This document shows positions 2,572 to 59,307 of a stretch of DNA of 64,000 nt, piece by piece. The translations under genes and the position numbers were made by a program. Origin of the DNA: Macrostomum lignano (Eukaryota); the NCBI GenBank assembly GCA_002269645.1, contig NIVC01003471.1, positions 32,248 through 96,247 of the forward strand. Direction: 5' to 3'. The notes beneath the pieces are model-generated. The model ran no database searches. It was not told the origin of the DNA and saw only the letters and a program-made list of their open reading frames with translations. How positions within the stretch are numbered: position 1 is the stretch's first letter; each line of letters begins with the position of its first letter.

Positions 2572-25461
<22,890 letters not shown>

Positions 25462-26200: not shown

Positions 26201-27494
26201 GCACTAAATGGTATATTGAAAATACTAGTTAATTCTTATTGCTTTCAGTGGGGACCAGCTTTAATTCCAATTTAATCGATGATAAAATATTTGATTCCCA
26301 GACTCAATGTGCGCTTGTTTTACTCAAAGACTCAAAGTTTTATTCCATTTGTCTGTTTATATCCAGCTTTTTGAGTCTAGTGATTGAAGAATATTGTCTT
26401 TTATTAAATCATATTTACTGATTCTGATTTTCGAACTTGACCCCCTCATCCTAAAGCTCTCGACCCTGCCTTTCTTCCAGTCAGCTGTGTGGAACCCCCA
26501 CTCAGCTGCATTCGTGCCCCCCTCTGGCCTGACCTTTTCTGTGTGGCTTGCAGCTCTACTTGTGCATGCGTCCAACTGGCATCCTGATATCTGATATCAG
26601 CCTAAATCAGTGTCAGCATGATCGCTAATATCTGACACTAGTATCAGCCTAAATCTGTGTCAGCATGATCGCTAATATCTGACACTAGTATCCGTCTCAA
26701 TCGCTGAGTTAGTGTCAGATAACCACCTAGTGGGTGTCAGAGGACCAAAAGTTAGTGTCAGATTTGGCTCCATTATATTGAGGGCCATCTGACACGGAAT
26801 TCATTGAAGCAACGCCCCTGCTCTGCTCTGTTCTAAGCATGAATGATCATCCGCTTTGCCCGTTTTCATTGGTTTCTGGGAATCGCTTACTCAATGCGGA
26901 AATGCTGACTTCCTGTGCTTCAGCTCTGGCGCAATTCTAATTGTATCCGAATACTATCACTATATTATTTATTAATATCGTTAACAAGTTTATATGTTCG
27001 ATATTCACTACTTATGCGTGCACATTTTTGGTCAGTAGTATATAGCAGCGGGTGTTGTAAACGTGAATAATTTTATTAATCACCCAGTACTGTAGTTGTC
27101 AGGCTGGCAGCAGTGTCACACTATGTTTTCTGTTTGTTCTGGTTATACCGTCTTCTCAGCCTGATTCTGTCTGTCGATTGTGTTGTCCTCTCGTGTCCAA
27201 GCCTTTTTTGTGCCCCCTTCCCCTCTGCTATAATTGTTTTCTTACAGATGACAGACAAATATAAATTCAGAGAAAATCTTTTTTGCTTTTTGAAGCTGTC
27301 CGGATTGGCGTATTTGGCGACTGAAACAGCTGTGATTGCTTTCTTGTCTTCATTGCTAAGTAAATAGTTTAGCCAGCAGATTAGCAATACGACACGAGAA
27401 TCGCTTTATTTTACAATTTTAAGACTGCCAAAATAGGTTGAAAAAAGGCCCTATTATTCTACTTATCAGTAGTGCAGCATTTTCTATCTTGCTG

Positions 27495-29990
27495 ATGCTG
27501 CTGCCGTTGCTCGTGCTCAGCCTGCTTGCCGCACAGACTGCAGCCCAGCCAGACAATGTCACCCTCATCGGCGCCCAGTTCCTGGACTCCTCCGTCAGCC
27601 TGACTGTTGGCAGGTCAGCTCACCTGTCCATCAGACTCAATCAGTCATTCTCAGCCGGTGACTACCTGTACTTCACCTACCAGGCCGACTCTCAGTCACC
27701 GGTGCTGCCCTATCAGGAGCACCAGGTTGTGCTGCCTCTGCCGGCTGTTTACCTGCCCCCCAATGCCACTGCGGCTGAGCTCAACATCACCGGCTGGGAT
27801 GCTGGCCGCCTCAGCATTGGCGTGAACTCCACCAACCCGGACTTCTTCAACAACCACAGCGTCTTTGTCCGGGTCACCGTGGCTAAGAGTGACGTCATTG
27901 ACGACTTCAACTTTGTGGTCGGCATTCTGTACGTGGTGCTCTGGTCCATGTCGTTTTACCCGCAGACTGTGCTCAACTATAGACGGAAGTGAGTTTTCTC
28001 GTTTGAGTCCTCTGTGCTGTGAGGTTCTCTGAGTCCTCTAGGCTGTGAGGTTCCTTGAGTCCTCTGTGCTGTGAGGTTCTGTGAGTCCTCTGTGCTGTGA
28101 GGTTCTGTGAGTCCTCTGGGCTGTGAGGTTCCTTAAGTCCTCTGCTGTGAGGTTCCTTGAGTCCTCTGTGCCCTAACCCTAAGGATTATGGTTAGGGTTA
28201 GGGCTGGCTGTCAACAGTCACAGGCCCCAGTCCAGCTGTGGTGGAGGCTGCAGTCCAGCCATGCCGCACCCGCAGGTCGGTGGTTGGCCTCAACTTCGAC
28301 TTCATCGGGCTGAACCTGCTGGGCTTCTGCGCCTACGCGGCCTTCAATGTGTGCCTGTACTGGGTGGCGCCGGTGCAGGAGCTGTACTTCAAGCGGCATC
28401 CGCGCGGCGTCATCCCCGTGGAAATCGCCGACGTGGTGTTCGCTTTGCACGCAGTTGTCATCACCTCTGTGCAGGTGAGAAAGTCACTCGGACTTGCTGG
28501 TTGCCAGATCAGAGACTGCAGCCGGGAGAGAATGTTGATGCGCACTACTAATAGTGCGCAACTCAGAAACGTCATTGCTTGTCCAACTGGGGCATTGCTC
28601 TAAAAGAAGAAAGAGCATTGTTATAAAATTATTTTGCCTTTAAAACTTTGAGGATTTTTGTGAGGTGTACACGCGTATTCTTGGAAGAGCGGATTAAAGG
28701 TAAAAGCGGTTCAAATATATCAGTTGCAGTCTGCAATGCTTGCTCAGACTCTTGTGCCATTGGATCGTCATCAAATTTATCCGATATTTCAATCGCTGTC
28801 ACCCCCACCGGGATCGCCAGGTGGTTCAGTGCTGCCTGTACGAGCGCGGCGGGCAGCGGGTGTCCCTGACTGCCCGCCTGCTGCTGGCCGCGATGCTGCT
28901 GTTCCTGCTGGCTGCCCTGCTGGTGTCCGCCTTCTGGCAGGCCGGCTTCGACTGGCTCAACTATCTGTACTGCGTGTCCTATGTGAAGCTGACCGTCACC
29001 CTCATCAAGTACTCGCCTCAGGCTTACATGAACTACAAGTAAGTGGCTTAGGTGGCTCTGCTCCCGTTTGCCCAGCCTCTGGCTACAGTTTGGTGGCTCT
29101 GATGCCCTCACATGGCTAACCTTACCGACCATAGCTTATCTTGCGCTCATTTCTTCACATAGCCCTCCATCTTTCCATATTCATTTTCTATCTTCCCACA
29201 CTCCTTTCCACCTTCCCACACTCCTCCCCATCTTCCCACATACATCCCTACCTTCCCACACTCCTTCCCATCTTCCCACATACATCCCTACCTTCCCACA
29301 CTCCTTCCCATCTTCCCACATACATCCCTACCTTCCCACACTCCTTCCCATCTTCCCACATACATCCCTACCTTCCCACACTCCTTCCCATCTTCCCACA
29401 TACATTCCTACCTTCCCACACTCCTTCCCATCTTCCCACATGCATTCCTACCTTCCCACACTCCTTCCCATCTTCCCACACTGCACTCATTCTCCCTATC
29501 TAGATCTTACCGCATCCCTCGTCTTTTCCCGCTGCTTCTTAATTCACATCCTCCTAGGCATGCCTTCCCATCCTTAGACCCAGGCTCCAACCTTTCCTTC
29601 CCAACTGAACTCCACACGCTCCCCAGACGGCAGTCGACAGACGGCTGGTCCATCGGGACGATCTTCACCGACTTCAGCGGCGGCGCGCTCAGCATCCTGC
29701 AGATGATGCTGCTGGCCTACAACTACAACGACTGGCCCTCCATCATGGGCGACCCGACCAAGTTCGGCCTGGGGCTGGTTTCCATCCTGTACGACTGCGT
29801 CTTCTTCGTGCAGCACTACGGGCTCTACGGCGAGCCGGCGAGGCGGCGGCGACAGCGACGGCTGCTGCGCGTGTCTGCGACGGAGGCTGCCGACTCGCCC
29901 GCCGTCAATCAGCCGCCCACTGCCGCCGCAGAGCAGCCCGACGAGGGTCAGCCGGGCGATGCCGATGATAACAAACCGCTGCTGGGTTGA
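27495..29990 (+). CDS. CTNS: Cystinosin, lysosomal PQ-loop cystine/H+ symporter, ~421 aa. Exons 27495-27988, 28276-28474, 28830(or 28821)-29038, 29627-29990
   Basis: Signal peptide and N-glycosylation-rich lumenal domain. PQ-loop 1 [37 protein letters not shown], PQ-loop 2 IKYSPQAYMNYKRQSTDGWSIG, GDPTKFGLG. Junctions are GT-AG and phase-consistent (1266 nt). Confidence 0.94.
28000..28170 (+). repeat. ~24-bp minisatellite (gagtcctctgtgctgtgaggttct), CTNS intron 1
   Basis: About 6-7 degenerate units. Confidence 0.85.
29190..29480 (+). repeat. 40-bp minisatellite (catcttcccacatacatccctaccttcccacactccttcc), CTNS intron 3
   Basis: About 7 tandem units. Confidence 0.9.
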
Positions 29991-33859: not shown

Positions 33860-36546
33860 ATGTCGGACCTCGAGTTCCCCAGGTGGGGCCACATCTCGGT
33901 CGGCTCCGAGGCCGCCGAGTCCGCCGCTGCCTTGAAGCCTGCCGCGGGCGCCGCCGGGCCGCTCGAGCTGAGCTTTCACACGTCGGACATGAGCACCCGC
34001 GGCAGCAGCACCAGCAGCAGCGGCAGGACTGTGGTTCAGCATCTCGTCACCGTCACCGACTCCGCCAGCTCCGGCGCCAGTTGCCCTAGCAACAATCTCC
34101 ATAGCAACGCGGTTCGCCTCCCGGAGCCGGTCACTTCGTCGACGGACGAATCGACGATCGCCTTCCGCCTGCCGGTGACGGACCTGCGCGATGTCGACGA
34201 CTCGACTACGACGTCGACTTCCAATTATCAGGCCGCTGCTTTCGAGCCGCCTGTGCAGCCTTCGAGAGCCGCTCCGGTGGCGCAAGTCGGTCAGCCGTCG
34301 GATCGCACCGCGCCAGCCCTGGCCGTCGCCGGCCCCCTGCCGAGTGGTCGCTGCACGGCGGTTGCCGAGTTTCACAAAAACTGGTCGAGTCGTGAGTTGC
34401 AGAAACAGACTTTGGGGGTATTTTCAGGGTGTCGCATGCGCTCTGTCTGCAGTAAGTGAAGCCTAGTGAGTAAACAACTGACGCCCCAATACTGGCATCA
34501 AACAGAGAAACCGCCCACTCTGCTAAGCCCACTTCCATTTTGTGACTTGATTGACATTCCATTTGGTCTCTAAAAAGTCTAAAAAGGCCCGCTTTGAAGA
34601 CAGCAAAACTGCAGGATAGTCTATAAAGCCATGCGGCTTCCAACGCAAACACCTTCAATGCCTTTTTGCAGCCGAAGACCTCAGCCAGCAGTCGGCTTCG
34701 TCGCCCAGTCACTCGTCGCTGCAGCCGCGCGCCCAGCCCGTGCACTCCGTCCGTTTCGCCTTGGACAACATCGGCAGCCGCGCCGGCGGCGGCAGCAGCG
34801 GCGTCTTCCATCGGCCTCGGGGCGACTGCGGCAGCGCCGAGCTGCGCCGTCTGGCGCCACGATTCCCGATCTGGAGCGAGACCGGCGTCACCGACACAAA
34901 CGTTGCCAACGCGTCGAAAGTTGCAACACCTCCGCCGCCGATGCCGAAAGCGGCCGCGCCCGCAGCCGCCGCTCCAGTCGCCTCCGCCAAGAAGGTTGAC
35001 AAAGACAGGTCAACGGGCTCGCAGTCCTGCTGCAGCGACTGCTCGCCGCTCCGCGTCCTCGGCCTGATGGTCTATTACCTTACCATATGGGCCGTGGGCG
35101 CCGGCTTCACCTGGCTGCTGCTGGAGGCCTCCCTGATGCTCACCAGCCGGGGCAGCTTCCCCTATTACATGTCGCCGCACTCGTTCTGCCTCTCCAGCCC
35201 CAGCATCGGATTTCCGGGTGGCAACCCGGAGCCCGGCAAGGTCACCGAGTTCGAAAACCTGGCCAGTCTCAACCAGACTCTGCGCCAGAAATTGAAAAGC
35301 CATTTTTTACAGCCTGAAGCACCGAAGATGAGGCAGTGCGATGCTGGGAGCGAGGAGACTGTGGACTCAGACCTGCTCATGCAGCCCTGCAATCTGACGC
35401 TGTTTGCTCATGCTGCCATCAGCCAGGTTGAGACCCTGCTCAAGAACAGACCAGCTGTGTTCGTAAAGGTGAGAATCTTGATTAGACTACGGGAGTTTCT
35501 TCCTATGAGCAGCCGCGGTTCTCTCAATAACAGCCTTTCTGCACTGTCTAACAGCCTCTCTCCAATGTCTAACAGCCTCTCTCCACTGTCTAACAGCCTC
35601 TCTCCACTGTCTAACAGCCTCTCTCCAATGTCTAACAGCCTCTCTCCACTGTCTAACAGTCTCTCTCCACTGTCTAACAGCCTCTCTCCACTGTCTAACA
35701 GCCTCTCTCCACTGTCTAACAGCCTCTCTCCACTGTCTAACAGCCTCTCTCCACTGTCTAACAGCCTCTCTCCACTGTCTAACAGCCTCTCTCCACTGTC
35801 TAACAGTCTCTCTCCACTGTCTAACAGCCTCTCTCCACTGTCTAACAGCCTCTCTCCACTGTCTAGCAGCCTCTCTCCACTGTCTAACAGCCTTTCTCCA
35901 CTGTCTAACAGCCTCTCTCCACTGTCTAACAGCCTCTCTCCACTGTCTAACAGCCTCTCCACTCCTTAAGCAACATCTCTTTACTAAGCAGCCTCTTCAC
36001 TCTCTGAGCAGCCTCTTCACTCTCTGAGCAGCCTCTTCACGCCCTGAGCATGCAGCCTCTTCACTCGCTGAGCAGCCTCTTCACTCCCTGAGCAGCCTCT
36101 TCACTCGCTGAGCAGCCTCTTCACTCCCTGAGCAGCCTCTTCACTCCCTGAGCAGCCTCTTCACTCCCTGAGCAGCCTCTTCACTCCCTGAGCAGCCTCT
36201 TTCTCCCCGCTGCAACTGGCAGATCAAGCGCCACCTGGGCTACCTGCCGGCCACCGGTGCTCACGTGACCATCACCTGCAAGGCCAGCACTTCAGCCGGC
36301 AGTGTCTCGCTGCGCTACTACAGCTGGAATGACAGCAAGCTGGTGGAGTCCGAGTCGTTTGGCAGCGTGCCAACTGTGTACTTCCCCATGCTGAGCCGGT
36401 GGCACAACGCGCCCGCTGTGCTGGTGTCGCTGGCCAAGGCCGACAGCTCCGTGTGGAGCGGCAAGGAGCTGAAGATCAGCTGCCAGGCCTCTGACGGCGG
36501 GGACTCGAAGCCGCCTGAACGGGAGGTCATCCTGAAGATCGGGTAG
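33860..36546 (+). CDS. Divergent Na,K-ATPase beta-subunit-like type II membrane protein, ~550 aa. Exons 33860-34391, 34672-35468, 36223-36546
   Basis: One TM segment (LRVLGLMVYYLTIWAVGAGFTWLLL), then PYY..SPSIGFP (cf. P.W...PGLGFRP), RPAVFVK|IKRHLGYLP (cf. KPCVF.KLNRI.GW.P), YFP..PAVLV and ISCQA (cf. YFPY..PLVAV, IEC.A). Junctions are phase-consistent (1653 nt). Confidence 0.72.
35540..36200 (+). repeat. 21-bp (ctgtctaacagcctctctcca) then 20-bp (ctgagcagcctcttcactcc) minisatellites, intron 2 of the beta-subunit-like gene
   Basis: Two adjacent arrays sharing cagcctct. Confidence 0.93.
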
Positions 36547-36889
36547 CTGCCTGCATTAATTTTTTTAAATTGCCTCAAAAAAATCCCGGAGAATTGGTGA
36601 CTGTTACGTCATAACGCAAACTTTTCCGTTTCTAAACAGTAAAGTCAGAAAAAAGTTAAAAAAAATTATTTGCTGTGTTTTACTTTTTTTGGATGAAGAA
36701 CTATTTTGTTAACGTCTAGGGTCGAGTTTCTAAGTTACCAATTCGAATACATTCTTGGAAGTTCGGAGACGTGCATGCAAACAAATAATGGAATATGAGC
36801 ATAACAAATGCCTTTTGCTAAACTAGGTCTGCTACAGGACCAGGGGCCCCAGTCTCACAGCTACAGGACCAGAGGCCCCAGTCTCACAG

Positions 36890-38497
36890 CTACAGGACCA
36901 GAGGCCCCAGCCTCATTCGCACTCGCAGCTGCATATTCGGGTCAATGTAGTTCTCGCTCAGCTGCCTGGACAAGGTGTTGTGCTCGCAGATCCACTCGCC
37001 GTGCCCCTTACGGTAGAGCAGCCGCTTCCTGTACAAGGAGGCCATCCGGTAGAAGGTCAGGCCCTGGAAGCAGCTGACCACCTTCACCGGGGCGCTGACC
37101 CCGCTGTGCAGCACCGCCTCGCTCCGCGCCTGATCGGTGTCAAGCCGCAGGTCGCTGCCTTCCTTGACGTGACCGGTGACGTCGGCCGGCGGCAGATGCA
37201 GCGTGCAGGGGTCGTAGATGGTGCGCCGGCCCCAGTGGTAGTAGAAGCTGCTGGCGCACAGCGAGTCCAGCCGCGGCCTGGCATGGAAGAAGTACAGGCC
37301 CTGCAGGACGGAGGCCAGGTCCCAGTCAGCCCAGTGCAGATCCGGGTCCAAGGCCAGCAGCAGCGAGTGGTTGGCAGCCAGGCGGCTGTACGCGAAGGCC
37401 AGCAGCTGGTTGCGGAGCGCCGACATCAGCTGAACGCGCTCGAGTTCCTCCAGGAGGCTTCGCTTCAGCTTGGGGCCGGGGAGGTGCCGCTTGCCGGTGG
37501 AGTAGGACACGTTCAGGCGGCAAGGCTCCGGCGAGTTGATGCGCCCGCAGCCGAGGAGGGTGGCGGAGACCCGGCTGTTGCCGGAGGAGCCGAGGTCGCT
37601 GGTTAGCTGGTGCAGGCGCTGTCGGGTTTCGTCGCTGGAGTCGTTCTCGAGGAAGACCAGGCTGCACCGGGCGAACTTGCCGCACAGGCGGAGCAAGTTC
37701 GAGATGGTTGTGTCCAGGCCTGCAGGATGGCAAAGGCGGAGTAGCCAGTCAGTGACTTCTGAGAGCCAGAACAATCAAGATGAAGCATCAGCAATGTATT
37801 TGCACAACCTCACCATGCCCAAACATTTCTCAATCCTCACAGCAGGTGCTAAACCCTCCTAAACAGTTGCTCAACCCTACTAAACGGGTGCTCAACCCTC
37901 CTAAACGGGTGCTCAACCCTCTCAATCATGTGCACAACCCTCCTAAACATGTGCACAACCCTCCTGAACATGTGCACAACCCTCCTGAACGTGTGCTCAA
38001 CCCTCTTAAACGGGTGCTCAACCCTCATAGCAGCCGCCTCATTCACCTGGCATGGCGTTGCGAGCCGTAGCCACAACCGCCAGCGACTGGGTGCTCAGCC
38101 AGCGCTCAGCCTGCGCCACCCGATACTCCGCAGACTCCTCAGCCGCAGACAGCCGCATCAGCGGCAGTCTGGTGCCCAGCTGGTCCATCCAGTGCAAGGC
38201 CGAGTCCATATGCCGCTCGGCCAGCCTGTAGAAGTGCTCGAAATTGTTGAAGTTCCGGGCCAGCTGCTCGTCAGAGTCGCCGACGCCGTCCCCAGTTGTC
38301 AGCGGCTGCGCTGGCAGCGAGCGGACCTTGGCGCGCAGGAAGTCGGCGGCTTTTTCGTCGGTCACCTCCGTTTCACCGGCGGACGGCAGAAACCTGCCGC
38401 CGGCTCCGAAGAGCACCGAAACGCAGAGCAGCAACAGAAGGACAGACAGCAGAGGCGCCCGTCGCAGCTTTCGATATAAGCAGCTTGAGCTGACCAT
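36890..38497 (-). CDS. Type II membrane glycosyltransferase, CAP59/CMT1 (GT69, PF11735)-like, ~426 aa. Exons 38497-38047, 37719-36890
   Basis: N-terminal signal anchor (PLLSVLLLLLCVSVLF). Spliced junction ARNAMPG|LDTTI is phase 1 and GT-AG. Motif series FLENDSSDET, RVQLMSALRNQLL, LDPDL (DxD), LCA, IYDP, VVSCFQG, CEH matches my recollection of this family. Confidence 0.62.
37850..38020 (+). repeat. 21-bp minisatellite (cacaaccctcctaaacatgtg-type) in the glycosyltransferase intron
   Basis: About 8 degenerate units. Confidence 0.85.
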
Positions 38498-39336: not shown

Positions 39337-39398
39337 CTAACCCTAGCCTAACCCTAACCCTAACCCTAGCCCTAACCCTAACCCTAACCCTAACCTAA
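39337..39398 (-). repeat. Interstitial (TTAGGG)n telomere-type repeat inside Helitron copy 1
   Basis: About 10 CCCTAA/CCCTAG units on the plus strand. Confidence 0.88.
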
Positions 39399-40259
39399 CA
39401 TTGAAATTTCAGTAATTCTCTCTAAGAGTCACTATAGCACTACTACAGCATTATAGCGATTTCCTGCAAGCCTCGACATCGTAGGGATTCCCAAATGAAT
39501 CTCTTAACTTCGACATGAAGCTTCTTTTATTTTTTACATTACGCTTTTTTTATCAGCGATCCCTCCCCTGAGGAGGCATCAAATAATGTAATAAAAAGTT
39601 TTCAATAAACTACATGTAGCTTCTGACTTTAGCCTTGAAATCTCATTTATACCCCCGTGAACCTTGACATCTCAGATATTCCCCCCGTAAGCCTTAACAT
39701 GTCAGCGATGGCCCCCATAAACCTTGAAATCTAAAAAATCCCCTGTTATTCTGTTAACCTTGAAACCCGATAAAATATAACCCTCAACCCACACCTGACC
39801 TAAACCTAACTTTAACCCAACCTAAAGCCTTGAAATCTCAGCAATTCTTCTCCCCTAAGCCTTGACATTTTAGTGATTCCTTCTTTAAGAATCACAGCAC
39901 TATAACGATTTCCACCAAGCTTTGACATCGTAGCAATTCCCAAATGAATCTTTTAACTTGAACATGACTTTTCTTTTATGTATAGCTCGTACATACGCTC
40001 GTAGTGCTACTTTTATTTTTTACATGACTCTTCTTCTATAAGCGCCTCCCGTGGCGAGCCAACAAAGAATGCAATAAAAAAATTGAGTAAAGTACATGAA
40101 CTTTGAAGTAGCTTCTGACTTTTGCTTTGACATCTCAGAAACCCCCCCCCCCGTAATCTCAGCAGTTATTCTCTGAGAGCCTTTACGTCTCAGTTTTTCT
40201 CCCCAGCACAGCATTATAGCTGCATTTAATTTTTGATTTTTATGATTTTCTATGATTTT

Positions 40260-56100: not shown

Positions 56101-57544
56101 ATTAGAATTTTAGGTGATTAGAATCCTCAGGTGATGGTTAGAATCCTCAGGTGATGATTAGAATCCTCGTGCAATGGCTAGAATCCACAGGTGATGCTCA
56201 GAGTCATCAGGTGATTAGAATCCTCAGGTGATGGTTAGAATCCTTAGGTAATGATTAGAATCCTCAGGTAATGATTAGAATCCTCAGGTGATGATTAGAA
56301 TCCTCAGGTGATGATTAGAATCCACAGGTGATGCTCAGAGTCATCAGGTGATTAGAATCCTCAGGTGATTAGAATCCTCAGGCAATTAGAATTTTAGGTG
56401 ATTAGAATCCTCAGGTGATGGTTAGAATCCTCAGGTGATGATAAGAATCCTCGTGCAATGGCTAGAATCCACAGGTGATGCTCAGAGTCATCAGGTGATT
56501 AGAATCCTCAGGTGATGGTTAGAATCCTTAGGTAATGATTAGAATCCTCAGGTAATGATTAGAATCCTCAGGTGATGATTAGAATCCTCAGGTGATGATT
56601 AGAATCCACAGGTGATGCTCAGAGTCATCAGGTGATTAGAATCCTCAGGTGATGGTTAGAATCCTTAGGTAATGATTAGAATCCTCAGGTGATGGTTAGA
56701 ATCCTTAGGTAATGATCAGAATCCTCGGGTGATGATTAGAATCCTTAGGTAATGATTAGAATCCTCAGGTGATGATTAGAATCCTCGAGTAATTATTTCG
56801 AGACCAGCAACTGTCTAAGGCAGCGAAGCCTCACCTGAATGGCATCTAGCAAGGCATCCGGGCTGATCTGGCCGCTGGGCCGCACGGTGTGAAGCAAGTC
56901 AGACAGACTGATCAGCTCGAGTCGAAGACAGGCATAGATGCTGCGCGCCTCAACAGGCGTCAGTTCGTTTGGCGGACGGGCGAGGCACCAGGCGCGCACA
57001 GCGTTGAATATCTGGCATTCGTCAGCGAAGAAGCTGTCCCGCGAGATGAGCTGCACCAGGGCCTGGCGGGACAGGCTCAGGAAGCCGGCGCTGGCGCTGC
57101 TGACCAGCGACACCTGCTGCTGATGAGGCTGGAGATGCTGAGGCTCAGGGCTGTTCGCTGCGCTGATTGGCTGCAAGGAAGTGAGCATGGAAGGAAGACT
57201 CGGTAAAATCCATAGAACAAAGATCAATTTATTAATAAAGTTGGTTGCTCGGAAATAATTTTGATTCTTTCAAATCAAGCCCATAGAAGGTATTAAAAAC
57301 ATTTAGCCACCTGCTGCTGCTGAGAAGTGTTGAGCACGGACTCAAGAATTTTGCTGGCATTTCGGTCGAGAAACTCCAAACAGGTGGAGCATAGAGACGA
57401 CAGACTGTAGGCAGTAGCCAAATTGTACACCAGCGCTATGTTGTTGTGGGTCAGACTGGCTTTGAGAAACTCGGACAGAGCTGTCTCCAGTTGGACAAAG
57501 TTGAATTGGTGAGCCAGGCCTAGGAGGTCCAAGATGGCGTCCTC
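53169..57544 (-). CDS. BTBD9: BTBD9 (BTB-BACK-two F5/8 type C-like domains), 3' part. Exons 57544-57311, 57170-56835, 55905-55618, 55112-54672, 53699-53169; upstream BTB exon(s) not found in the window
   Basis: LLGLAHQFNFVQLE, ISRDSFFADECQIFNAV, YRGILLPEENLAT, LLLWDKD.RSYSYYIEVS...DW..VIDH..YLCRSWQELYFP, DWDSGYTCHQLG, NTANEVFHVVHFQCP all match BTBD9. All junctions are GT-AG, phase 0. Confidence 0.92.
53745..54600. repeat. 27-bp quasi-palindromic minisatellite (gtacacctgtgataggaattctatggt), ~31 copies, in the last coding intron of BTBD9
   Basis: Tandem units; most contain GAATTC. Confidence 0.96.
55146..55632 (-). repeat. 26-bp minisatellite made of the BTBD9 exon end plus 5' splice site (TAGCTACTATATTGAG|GTGAGTCAAA)
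   Basis: actcacctc occurs at exact 26-bp spacing from 55196 to 55612 (17 copies), plus 2 degenerate distal copies. Confidence 0.95.
55925..56790. repeat. ~19-22-bp degenerate minisatellite (gattagaatcctcaggtgat), BTBD9 intron
   Basis: Tandem units with internal block duplication. Confidence 0.9.
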
Positions 57545-58058: not shown

Positions 58059-59307
58059 TTCAGTTGGGGAGAAAGTTCCCGCAGTTTCTAGAACTTTCTG
58101 TCTAAGAACTTTCTGGGACATTCCAGAGCCCAGCTGTGTGGGTATATATTGAGGGTGGGTGTGTGTGATTCTAACATGCTATTTAAACCAAAGAGATTAC
58201 TCACTAGTCAGCAGCATTATGGATCTCTCTCGGGCCTATATTTGTGGTCTCCTGCTCTACGACTTCAAATCTGGACTGTCAGCCGCAGAATCCAGCCGCT
58301 GCATCAACGCTGCATTTGGTGCGGGTACTGTGTTTGAAAGCACTGCCCAGGACTGGTTTGCGCGGTTTTGCCAGGGAAATTTTAACCTCGAAGATTTGCC
58401 CCAGTCAGGCCATCCCTCCAAGGTTGATGACGACCGGCTGCGCAGACTCGTAGAGGCTGACCCTCGGCAAACCACGCGTGAGTTAGCGCAAGTCCTTGAT
58501 GTAGACCATAAAATGGTCACCAGTCATTTGCATCAGCTGGGCAAGGTGGTACAAGCTGGCACAATGGGTACCCCACCAATTGTCAGATTGGGACAAGGAG
58601 CGCAGGGCAGAGGTGGCCACTTCTCTCCTCTCCTACAGGCGCACGCACAACTGGCTGAAGTCCATCGTTATAGGCAATGAAAAGTGGTGCCTGTACGTCA
58701 ACATCAAATGTCGACGATTATAGGTTGATGCTGACGCGACACCTGAGCTGCAGCCAAAGTCCGGACTCTACCCATGCAAGGTCATGCTGTGCGTGTGGTG
58801 GGACTGCAAGGGCATCATCTACTACGAACTGCTGCCACCCAACACATTGATTATAGCCGACCTATACTGCCAACAGCTAGACCGATTGGCCGCCGCCATT
58901 GCACAGAAGCATCCAAACCATGGCCTGGTACGATTCCTCTATGATAACGCTCGTCCACACACGAGCTAGGGTGACTCGCCAAAAGCTACTGGACCTTGGC
59001 TGGGAATTTGTGCCCCATCCACCATATTCACCAGACTTGGCACCAAGCGACTATCACCTGTTTTTGTCTCTGGCCAACGCCTTGAACAACAAAACCTTCG
59101 CTGATGATGAAGAGCTTGATAACTGGCTGAACAACTTTTTCACTTCAAAGCCAGAGAAATTTTACAGTGATGGTATTATGAGTCTGCCTGAAAAATGGCA
59201 GAAGGTGATCGATTGTGATGGTGATTATTTTGTTTCTTAATTGGCTTTTTTAAAAAACTGTTTGACAGAAAGTTCTAGAAACCGTGGGAACTTTCTCTCC
59301 AACCAAA
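58059..59307 (+). mobile_element. Full-length mariner (Tc1/mariner, DD34D type) element, 1249 bp, in a BTBD9 intron
   Basis: 44-bp TIRs with 5 mismatches (TTCAGTTGGGGAGAAAGTTCCC... / TTTGGTTGGAGAGAAAGTTCCC...); TA duplication at 58057-58058 and 59308-59309. Confidence 0.93.
58219..59240 (+). pseudogene. Inactivated mariner transposase
   Basis: WVPHQL, GNEKW (first catalytic D replaced by N), MLCVWWDCKGIIYYELL, YDNARPH, HPPYSPDLAPSDYHLF. Two frameshifts and an internal stop. Confidence 0.92.

What the first reader, a model, noticed from the sequence alone, without database searches (positions are those of the whole stretch)
36890..38497. Intron-containing CAP59/GT69-like glycosyltransferase in an animal genome: horizontal-transfer candidate
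The spliced 426-aa protein has a Golgi-type signal anchor and the motif series ARN / ENDSxDxT / LRN / DxD / YD / VxSCFxG / CEH. I associate this series with the cryptococcal capsule mannosyltransferase family and its bacterial, algal and giant-virus relatives, not with standard metazoan glycosyltransferases. The GT-AG intron and host-like GC-rich coding point to a domesticated nuclear gene rather than contamination. It could make an unusual mucus, adhesive or glycocalyx glycan (inference).
Basis: partly seen in the sequence, partly recalled or inferred. Interest (0 to 1): 0.8.

Follow-up and report, generated by a model that had tools for sequence, protein, structure and literature searches.

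The report
Giant-virus-type glycosyltransferase gene in a flatworm
This is a real, intron-containing nuclear gene of the flatworm Macrostomum lignano for a Golgi-type sugar-adding enzyme; apart from its own paralogs, every close relative I could place lies on a giant-virus contig, so it was probably acquired by horizontal transfer and then multiplied in the worm.

Summary
On the minus strand, exon 1 (38497-38047), a 327-nt GT-AG intron and exon 2 (37719-36890) splice to a 426-aa protein.

The window is Macrostomum lignano nuclear DNA. The protein has a confident GT-A fold; the best solved match is yeast Mnn9. It hits Pfam CAP59_mtransfer (PF11735, CAZy GT69) at E 2e-6 but 27.9 bits, just under the 28.8 cut-off.

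It fits an uncharacterised PF11735-related subfamily far better. An HMM built only from non-Macrostomum members scores it 171 bits. Five members on informative contigs sit beside giant-virus-type genes, and more distant members occur in bacterial MAGs.

M. lignano has at least eight divergent paralog lineages, monophyletic in 199/200 NJ bootstraps. Three of the five paralogs checked are intronless, and the two with introns have them at different sites. Of 30 hit clusters whose source names were looked up, the only animal named was M. lignano.

Ancient horizontal acquisition followed by expansion is the best reading (about 0.6). The donor and direction are unresolved: nesting inside the viral set gets only 113/200. 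Sugar specificity is unknown. Interest is moderate to high.

The parts
38047..38497 (-). Exon 1 (451 nt). It encodes aa 1-150 and the first base of codon 151: a short cytoplasmic tail (R9, K10, R12, R13), a signal anchor at about aa 14-32, a low-confidence stem at aa 33-120, and the first beta-strand with the ARN motif (145-147).
   Evidence: ORF and splice-site reading; hydropathy; AF2 secondary structure.
37720..38046 (-). Spliceosomal intron, 327 nt, GTGAAT...CCTGCAG, phase 1. More than half of it is a 21-nt minisatellite (37843-38026, 8.8 copies).
   Evidence: The junction matches the intronless paralog P0002 and database protein P0001.
36890..37719 (-). Exon 2 (830 nt including the stop at 36890-36892). 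It encodes the rest of the GT-A catalytic domain: ENDSSDET 175-182, LLGCG 205-209, LRN 252-254, the DxD motif DPD 275-277, YD 319-320, VVSCFQG 364-370 and CEH 395-397.
36831..36915 (.). A 29-nt x 2.9 minisatellite that overlaps the last 26 nt of the CDS: the last seven full codons, two bases of the one before, and the stop codon.
   Evidence: The C-terminus is RMRLGPLVL*, against ...VKDENTP* in the paralog.

Best explanation

What it encodes:
- A 426-aa type II membrane protein: a short basic cytoplasmic tail, one signal anchor, a stem, and a lumenal catalytic domain.
- The catalytic domain has a GT-A fold with a DxD motif (D275-P-D277) and the nucleotide-sugar-binding motifs typical of metal-dependent Golgi glycosyltransferases.

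How it most likely works (inferred from the fold and from the nearest characterised relatives): it sits in the Golgi or secretory pathway. It binds a nucleotide sugar through the ARN and ENDSxDxTR loops and a divalent metal through DxD. It then transfers the sugar to a glycan on a secreted or surface glycoconjugate. GDP-mannose is the default guess by analogy with GT69 Cmt1 and GT62 Mnn9, but the donor is not established.

Where it belongs: it is not a typical animal glycosyltransferase. It belongs to an uncharacterised subfamily related to Pfam PF11735 (CAP59/Cmt1, CAZy GT69). Every member of that subfamily whose genomic context I could read lies on a giant-virus (Nucleocytoviricota) contig. 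More distant relatives occur in bacterial MAGs.

History: in M. lignano it is one of at least eight divergent paralog lineages that form one clade. Most are intronless, and the introns that exist lie at different positions. The most likely history is one ancient horizontal acquisition of a giant-virus-type gene in the macrostomid lineage, followed by amelioration to host codon usage, duplication and sporadic intron gain.

Shown: the gene model, topology, fold, family relationship, paralog family, intron pattern and genomic integration.
Inferred: catalytic activity, donor sugar, biological role, and the source and direction of transfer.
For: Gene model and topology.

Organism: (M. lignano proteins PAA*/A0A267*, and 100% identity to A0A1I8JDJ2).

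Fold:
- The AF2 model has mean pLDDT 80 and pTM 0.76. Ten-residue block means are 88-98 over residues 121-320, except 231-240 at 80.
- Foldseek against the PDB: top hit S. cerevisiae Mnn9 with GDP and Mn (3zf8, E 7e-8), followed by GT2, GT25 and GT27 GT-A enzymes.

Family:
- PF11735 is the only Pfam hit (E 2.2e-6, 27.9 bits, residues 150-390 against profile positions 16-224 of 242).
- 38 of 46 family members hit PF11735.
- The window protein carries all 13 invariant and 15 near-invariant family residues.
- An HMM built from 147 non-Macrostomum members scores the window protein 171 bits and its paralogs 165-195 bits.

Viral context of relatives:
- P0014 lies next to a D5 primase-helicase.
- P0016 lies on a contig with RNA polymerase subunit Rpb5, PIF1 helicase and collagen genes.
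- P0025 lies two genes from a DNA polymerase B gene.
- P0024 lies among glycosylation genes, T5orf172, RING and xanthine dehydrogenase genes in compact intronless arrays.
- P0060 lies on a 127-kb contig of ORFans with a faint PARP_regulatory (poxvirus poly(A) polymerase subunit family) hit.
- 13 IMG/VR loci carry relatives, four of them on GVMAG-named contigs.
- The best predicted-structure match among viral proteins is a Marseillevirus LCMAC102 glycosyltransferase (E 1.5e-22, 24% identity), then Sylvanvirus and ChoanoV1.

Distribution:
- An exhaustive HMMER search of 1.84 billion representative proteins gave 511 hits.
- Seven hits have E below 1e-30. The five with source names are M. lignano. 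The other two (P0006, P0009) are unnamed Logan fragments 58-59% identical to M. lignano paralogs.
- The next tier is unnamed metagenomic sequence.

Paralog clade: monophyletic in 199/200 NJ bootstraps.

Introns: P0002, P0005 and P0007 are intronless. P0004 has one intron at about aa 227. The window gene has one at aa 151.

Amelioration: GC3 is 0.87, against 0.76-0.77 for host exons and 0.28-0.65 for viral homologues.

GT69 biology (Golgi-localised GT69-2; GDP-Man alpha-1,3-mannosyltransferase Cmt1): PMC8092235. GT69 predicted to have a GT-A fold: PMC8476585.
Against: - The window protein falls 0.9 bit short of Pfam's gathering score, and two paralogs have no Pfam hit at E <= 0.01.
- The tree is only NJ on saturated distances (about 25% identity). 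The Macrostomum clade is a long branch. Rooted on a bacterial-type member, it is nested within the viral-context sequences in only 113/200 replicates. Donor and direction are therefore unresolved.
- Its most frequent sister (P0010, 137/200) is a 1.3-kb contig of unknown origin from a marine biofilm metagenome.
- Only 150 of the 511 hits were listed, and source names were looked up for only 30. More distant homologues in other animals or protists cannot be excluded.
- No true fungal GT69 sequences were available to include in the tree.
- There is no direct expression or activity evidence.
Confidence: 0.6

Rival explanations
1. Vertical descent. An ancient eukaryotic (opisthokont) GT69-like gene was retained in macrostomid flatworms and lost in nearly all other animals. 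Giant viruses picked up their copies from protist hosts.
For: GT69 is widespread in fungi, the sister kingdom (PMC8778642, PMC8092235). The Macrostomum clade falls outside the viral-context crown in 87/200 bootstrap replicates. The paralogs are deeply diverged (28-64% identity), so the gene is old in this lineage.
Against: The Macrostomum proteins score 165-195 bits against an HMM of the viral/metagenomic subfamily, but only 17-28 bits or nothing against PF11735, the family named for the fungal CAP59/Cmt1 enzymes. None of the 30 looked-up hit clusters was named as fungal or as an animal other than M. lignano. The ancestral state appears intronless. The scenario needs losses in essentially every other sequenced animal lineage.
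Confidence: 0.17
2. Transfer in the opposite direction or from a third party. Giant viruses acquired the gene from animals or protists related to the source, or the flatworm took it from a bacterium or protist rather than from a virus.
For: Giant viruses commonly capture host genes (PMC10583209). Bacterial members exist in Caulobacteraceae, Flavobacteriaceae, Leadbetterella and Paludibacter MAGs. Support for nesting is weak. The sister P0010 is of unknown origin.
Against: The viral-context sequences are numerous and far more diverse than the single tight flatworm clade. The bacterial-type sequences form the most distant group in the midpoint-rooted tree. The closest neighbours with informative contigs are all giant-virus-like.
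Confidence: 0.15
3. Contamination or assembly artefact: the gene is not really in the flatworm genome.
For: Patchy taxonomic distribution is the classic signature of contaminant genes.
Against: The gene has a spliceosomal intron that must be removed. It lies in a 64-kb window with host exons, gypsy and mariner elements. Its GC3 matches host exons. Paralogs lie on M. lignano contigs up to 832 kb, some next to tubulin, cyclophilin and caspase/ankyrin genes. No viral hallmark gene was found nearby.
Confidence: 0.02
4. The window copy is a decaying, non-functional paralog. Minisatellites have invaded both its intron and its 3' end.
For: A minisatellite fills most of the intron, and another overlaps the last 26 nt of the CDS including the stop. 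On the midpoint-rooted NJ tree the window protein has one of the longest terminal branches in the flatworm clade, level with P0007 and the P0005 group.
Against: The reading frame is intact across 426 codons with canonical splice sites. All 28 invariant or near-invariant family residues are retained. The catalytic domain is modelled with high confidence. GC3 is strongly biased at 0.87, as in host coding sequence.
Confidence: 0.05

Closest known systems
CAZy GT69 / Pfam PF11735 CAP59_mtransfer (Cryptococcus Cmt1 and Cap59, Aspergillus ClpA, Neurospora GT69-2)
   Same: PF11735 is the only Pfam family hit (E 2.2e-6), covering almost the whole domain. 38 of 46 subfamily members match it. Both are type II membrane proteins of the secretory pathway with a GT-A-type catalytic domain (PMC8092235, PMC8476585).
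   Different: The score is just below the gathering cut-off, and two paralogs do not hit at E <= 0.01. The protein is much closer to an uncharacterised viral/metagenomic subfamily (171 bits against 28 bits). The characterised GT69 enzymes I found in the literature are fungal alpha-1,3-mannosyltransferases. Activity here is unknown.
Uncharacterised giant-virus glycosyltransferases (for example A0A481YUL9 of Marseillevirus LCMAC102, and proteins of Sylvanvirus, ChoanoV1 and GVMAG contigs)
   Same: They share the N-terminal anchor (most members), the motif set (VENDSxDxTR, LGCG..C, RxxKMxxLRN, DxD, YD, SCFxG, CEH) and the predicted fold (Foldseek E 1.5e-22, target-normalised TM-score 0.77).
   Different: The viral proteins are about 300-360 aa. 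The flatworm proteins (full-length models 383-426 aa) have a longer stem and an extra loop of about 10-15 residues (aa 220-240, shared only with P0010). They use DPD rather than DLD/DMD/DFD and are encoded by GC3-rich nuclear genes, two of the five checked carrying an intron.
Yeast Mnn9/Anp1 (GT62) Golgi mannosyltransferases
   Same: Mnn9 is the best solved-structure match (3zf8, E 7e-8, with GDP and Mn bound). Both are type II Golgi GT-A enzymes. One relative (P0010) has a weak Anp1 Pfam hit.
   Different: Sequence identity is only 13%. There is no significant sequence-level match to any PDB chain. It is a different CAZy family.
Giant-virus genes found in eukaryotic genomes
   Same: A virus-type gene is embedded in a eukaryotic nuclear genome.
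   Different: This is an isolated, ameliorated and expanded gene family with its own introns, not a block of viral genes. No viral hallmark gene was seen in the 64-kb window. That giant-virus insertions are described mainly from protists and algae, and that bilaterian cases are rare, is my own recollection and was not checked here.

Membership tests
Pfam PF11735 CAP59_mtransfer / CAZy GT69 | Whole-protein score at or above Pfam's gathering cut-off (28.8 bits) | tested here: not met
   27.9 bits, E 2.2e-6, which is 0.9 bit short. Paralogs score 17 bits or have no hit at E <= 0.01. Viral-context relatives score 27-46 bits, several above the cut-off. 38 of 46 members hit at E <= 1e-3.
Pfam PF11735 CAP59_mtransfer / CAZy GT69 | GT-A fold catalytic domain with a DxD metal-binding motif | tested here: met
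   AF2 ten-residue block means are 88-98 over residues 121-320, except 231-240 at 80. All top Foldseek PDB hits are GT-A enzymes. In the family alignment D275 is at least 90% conserved and D277 is invariant.
Pfam PF11735 CAP59_mtransfer / CAZy GT69 | Type II membrane topology (N-terminal signal anchor, lumenal catalytic domain) | tested here: met
   A single hydrophobic segment, peak KD mean 2.54 at aa 14-32, preceded by R9, K10, R12 and R13. No other hydrophobic window.
Pfam PF11735 CAP59_mtransfer / CAZy GT69 | GDP-mannose-dependent alpha-1,3-mannosyltransferase activity | not testable with these tools
   This needs an enzyme assay. At 13-25% identity to any characterised enzyme, donor specificity cannot be inferred.
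Giant-virus-type PF11735-related subfamily (uncharacterised) | Strong match to a profile built only from non-flatworm members | tested here: met
   171 bits, E 4e-50, against an HMM of 147 non-Macrostomum sequences.
Giant-virus-type PF11735-related subfamily (uncharacterised) | Conserved motif set: R146, E175-N-D-S-x-D-x-T-R183, L-G-C 206-208, C217, R245/M249/R253-N254, D275/D277, D320, S366/F368/Y374, C395-E-H397 | tested here: met
   All 13 invariant and 15 near-invariant columns of the 46-sequence alignment are present in the window protein.
Horizontally acquired gene in an animal | Physically integrated in the host nuclear genome (host flanks, spliceosomal intron, host-like codon usage) | tested here: met
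Horizontally acquired gene in an animal | No homologues in other animals closer than the non-animal hits (high alien index) | tested here: inconclusive
   The top tier holds only M. lignano proteins and macrostomid-like fragments. The next tier (E 5.5e-29 and weaker) is mostly unnamed metagenomic sequence (it also holds two more M. lignano or macrostomid-like fragments), and the five with informative contigs are viral-context. Only 150 of 511 hits were listed, and source names were looked up for only 30.
Horizontally acquired gene in an animal | Phylogenetic nesting of the animal clade inside the donor group with support | tested here: inconclusive
   The flatworm clade is monophyletic in 199/200 replicates, but nested in the viral-context crown in only 113/200 (NJ).

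The most novel reading that the evidence does not exclude
A giant-virus glycosyltransferase was captured by an ancestor of macrostomid flatworms, domesticated, and expanded into at least eight Golgi enzymes that build lineage-specific glycans, for example on mucus, adhesive secretions, egg shells or the glycocalyx. That would be a functional gene-family transfer from Nucleocytoviricota to a bilaterian. It would imply that giant viruses infect, or once infected, free-living flatworms.
Probability: 0.35. Interest if true: 0.75.

Novelty: new member of a known kind. Interest (0 to 1): 0.6.

Why it matters
Well-supported, expressed horizontal acquisitions in bilaterian animals are thought to be uncommon, and I know of almost none from giant viruses. 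That is general knowledge, not something I tested.

Here an enzyme class that shapes cell-surface and secreted glycans has been taken up and multiplied in M. lignano, a laboratory model flatworm. The hypothesis is therefore directly testable by standard expression and knock-down experiments.

It also flags a large, uncharacterised giant-virus glycosyltransferase subfamily related to the fungal capsule enzymes Cap59 and Cmt1. The flatworm paralogs could serve as a tractable eukaryotic entry point for working out its biochemistry.

If the vertical-descent rival is right instead, the family would be a striking case of near-universal loss in animals.

Tried and rejected
- **Word-indexed homologue searches.** All three had poor recall and returned mostly unnamed metagenome proteins. 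They could not name cellular eukaryotic relatives.
- **PDB sequence searches.** Neither the single sequence nor the profile gave anything significant. NCBIfam gave nothing relevant.
- **Bacterial genome scan with the family alignment.** The tool could not derive a search pattern from the alignment. A single bacterial-type member was used instead.
- **Introner hypothesis.** I tested whether the intron is a copy of a dispersed element. blastn found only local minisatellite self-matches in the window and in four other M. lignano loci. The idea was dropped for lack of evidence.
- **A false neighbour.** The 'DUF3432/EGR-like' neighbour I first noted is an artefact of a tandem SHPSPIIL repeat. Several other Pfam hits on window ORFs (Cornifin, DUF3060, DUF4081 and others) look like low-complexity artefacts too, but I did not check them.
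- **Giant-virus insertion block.** Rejected: no viral hallmark domains were found in the large ORFs of the window.
- **Literature.** Searches found nothing on this family in Macrostomum or any other animal.
Full report
**1. The observation**

The region was read on both strands. On the minus strand, an ATG at 38497 opens a 152-codon ORF that ends one codon after a GTGAAT donor. A second ORF runs from inside the intron down to a stop at 36890-36892.

Joining 38497-38047 to 37719-36890 removes a 327-nt GT...AG intron.

The junction (ARNAMPG|LDTTISN) aligns without a gap to an intronless paralog. It is also present in a 100%-identical database protein.

Hydropathy shows one anchor, peaking at aa 14-32, preceded by four basic residues. 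All seven quoted motifs are present at the stated order. Their core residues are invariant or at least 90% conserved columns of the family alignment.

**2. Whose DNA it is**

- The identical and paralogous proteins are all from Macrostomum lignano, a free-living flatworm.
- The window also holds a Ty3/gypsy pol ORF, a mariner HTH, and host-type PQ-loop and BACK exons.
- No viral hallmark domain was seen in the large ORFs tested.
- The gene's GC3 is 0.87, against 0.76-0.77 for the host exons and 0.28-0.65 for viral homologues.
- Contamination is therefore excluded.

**3. What the protein is**

- PF11735 (CAP59_mtransfer, CAZy GT69) is the only Pfam hit. It scores E 2.2e-6 and 27.9 bits against a cut-off of 28.8, covering residues 150-390.
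- No PDB chain matches by sequence.
- An AlphaFold2 model built on a 46-sequence alignment is confident in the catalytic domain: mean pLDDT 80, pTM 0.76, and ten-residue block means of 88-98 over residues 121-320 apart from one block at 80.
- Foldseek against the PDB returns only GT-A enzymes. The top hit is yeast Mnn9 with GDP and Mn (3zf8, E 7e-8), followed by ArnC, COLGALT1, RmlT and the GalNAc-transferases.
- The secondary-structure order fits the canonical GT-A layout: beta1 followed by ARN, beta2 followed by ENDSxDxTR, and a later strand followed by DPD. Matching this to the GT-A layout rests on established knowledge of that fold.

The protein is therefore a type II, DxD-type GT-A glycosyltransferase of the secretory pathway. 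Its donor and acceptor cannot be read from the sequence. GDP-mannose is only an analogy with Cmt1 (PMC8092235) and Mnn9.

**4. Relatives**

An exhaustive HMMER search of 1.84 billion representative proteins found 511 hits at E <= 1e-3, of which 7 were at E <= 1e-30.

*The top tier.* The five hits with source names are M. lignano paralog clusters. The other two (P0006, P0009) are short unnamed Logan fragments 58-59% identical to M. lignano paralogs. A lower-ranking JGI fragment (P0013, E 1e-23) is 64% identical. These fragments presumably come from other macrostomids.

*The paralogs.* M. lignano has at least eight divergent paralog lineages at 28-64% identity.

*The next tier.* This tier (E 5.5e-29 and weaker) consists mostly of proteins of about 300-360 aa from metagenomes, most of them with an N-terminal anchor. 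The five whose contigs were long enough to judge all lie in compact, intron-free, ORFan-rich neighbourhoods with giant-virus-type genes:
- a D5 primase-helicase next to P0014;
- RNA polymerase subunit Rpb5, PIF1 helicase and collagen genes around P0016;
- a DNA polymerase B gene near P0025;
- a glycosylation, T5orf172 and RING neighbourhood around P0024;
- a faint PARP_regulatory hit near P0060.

P0011's 2.9-kb contig shows only an adjacent GT32-type glycosyltransferase gene.

*Other viral evidence.* Thirteen IMG/VR loci carry relatives, four of them on GVMAG-named contigs. The best predicted-structure match among viral proteins is a Marseillevirus LCMAC102 glycosyltransferase (E 1.5e-22), followed by Sylvanvirus and ChoanoV1.

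*Bacteria.* More distant members occur in bacterial MAGs.

*Link to GT69.* 38 of 46 aligned members hit PF11735, so the group is a PF11735-related subfamily. An HMM built from 147 non-flatworm members scores the window protein 171 bits, against 27.9 bits for PF11735.

**5. Evolutionary reading**

- In an NJ tree of 163 sequences and 292 columns, the flatworm paralogs are monophyletic in 199/200 bootstraps.
- Their most frequent sister (137/200) is P0010. It lies on a 1.3-kb contig from a marine biofilm metagenome and its organism is unknown.
- In the midpoint-rooted tree, the successive sister groups contain viral-context sequences. The bacterial-type group is the most distant.
- The support is weak. 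Rooted on a bacterial-type member, the flatworm clade is nested within the 17 viral-context sequences in only 113/200 replicates.
- The intron pattern is informative. P0002, P0005 and P0007 are intronless. P0004 has one intron near aa 227. The window gene has one at aa 151. Both introns are largely minisatellite.

This pattern fits an intronless ancestor with later, independent intron gains. Together with the absence of any other named animal among the 30 hit clusters looked up, it favours an old horizontal acquisition followed by amelioration and expansion. I put this at about 0.6. Vertical descent with massive loss, or transfer from a non-viral donor or in the reverse direction, remain open.

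**6. Comparison with what is known**

The protein works like a Golgi GT-A glycosyltransferase. It is related to GT69, but strictly fails the Pfam threshold by 0.9 bit. It clearly belongs to an uncharacterised giant-virus-type sister subfamily.

The M. lignano proteins are already in databases as 'hypothetical protein' or under automatic names such as 'Glycosyltransferase family 2 protein'. The names 'SLC12 domain-containing' and 'DHC_N2 domain-containing' probably reflect fused or mis-merged gene models; I did not check this. No paper in the held library discusses them.

**7. Verdict**

The finding is a new member of a known kind of enzyme with an unusual, probably horizontal, origin. Interest is 0.6.

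Noticed in passing
window 39337-39399: A run of about 10.8 copies of CCCTAA (the complement of TTAGGG). This is an interstitial telomere-type repeat about 0.85 kb upstream of the glycosyltransferase start codon.
   Followed up: partly
window 37843-38026; L022 6682-7355: The introns of two paralogs lie at different positions, but both consist largely of minisatellites with units of about 20 nt. This may hint at intron origin or growth through tandem-repeat DNA. No dispersed copies were found in the limited M. lignano sequence at hand.
   Followed up: partly
window 36831-36915 and 36000-36201: A 29-nt x 2.9 minisatellite overlaps the last 26 nt of the glycosyltransferase CDS, including its stop. 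A separate 20-nt x 9.9 array lies about 0.7 kb downstream of the gene.
   Followed up: partly
window 3042-6944 (-): An uninterrupted 1300-aa Ty3/gypsy-type pol ORF with RT, RNase H, integrase zinc-binding and integrase core domains. It may be a young retrotransposon copy.
   Followed up: no
window 19869-20942 (+): A 357-aa ORF that hits Pfam DUF3432 is in fact a long tandem peptide repeat (SHPSPIIL)n. The domain hit is a low-complexity artefact. Several other large ORFs with extreme GC skew (for example 22-24 kb and 60-62 kb) look similar.
   Followed up: partly
window 58159-58680 (+); 27438-27992 (+); 56793-57227 (-): A mariner/Mos1 transposase HTH fragment, and host-type exons with a PQ-loop and a BTB-associated BACK domain (GC3 0.76-0.77). 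These are the flanking animal genes.
   Followed up: partly
L017 (Logan SRR31628434, 1193 nt): A macrostomid-like homologue, 59% identical to M. lignano P0002, with a one-base frameshift after the VENDS motif. It is either an assembly error or a pseudogene in another species. It has no intron at the window gene's intron site.
   Followed up: partly
L021 (ENA marine biofilm metagenome, 1342 nt): P0010 is the closest non-Macrostomum sequence. It shares the flatworm-specific loop insertion but lacks an N-terminal anchor, and stop codons lie in frame upstream. Its organism is unknown.
   Followed up: partly
L025 (NCBI GCA_050043615.1 contig JBNHEI010002746.1): A relative (P0024) sits in a compact cluster with GT25, a pyruvyl transferase, PAPS reductase, GT_PLOD and an ABC transporter gene. 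This looks like a giant-virus glycan-synthesis gene neighbourhood.
   Followed up: no
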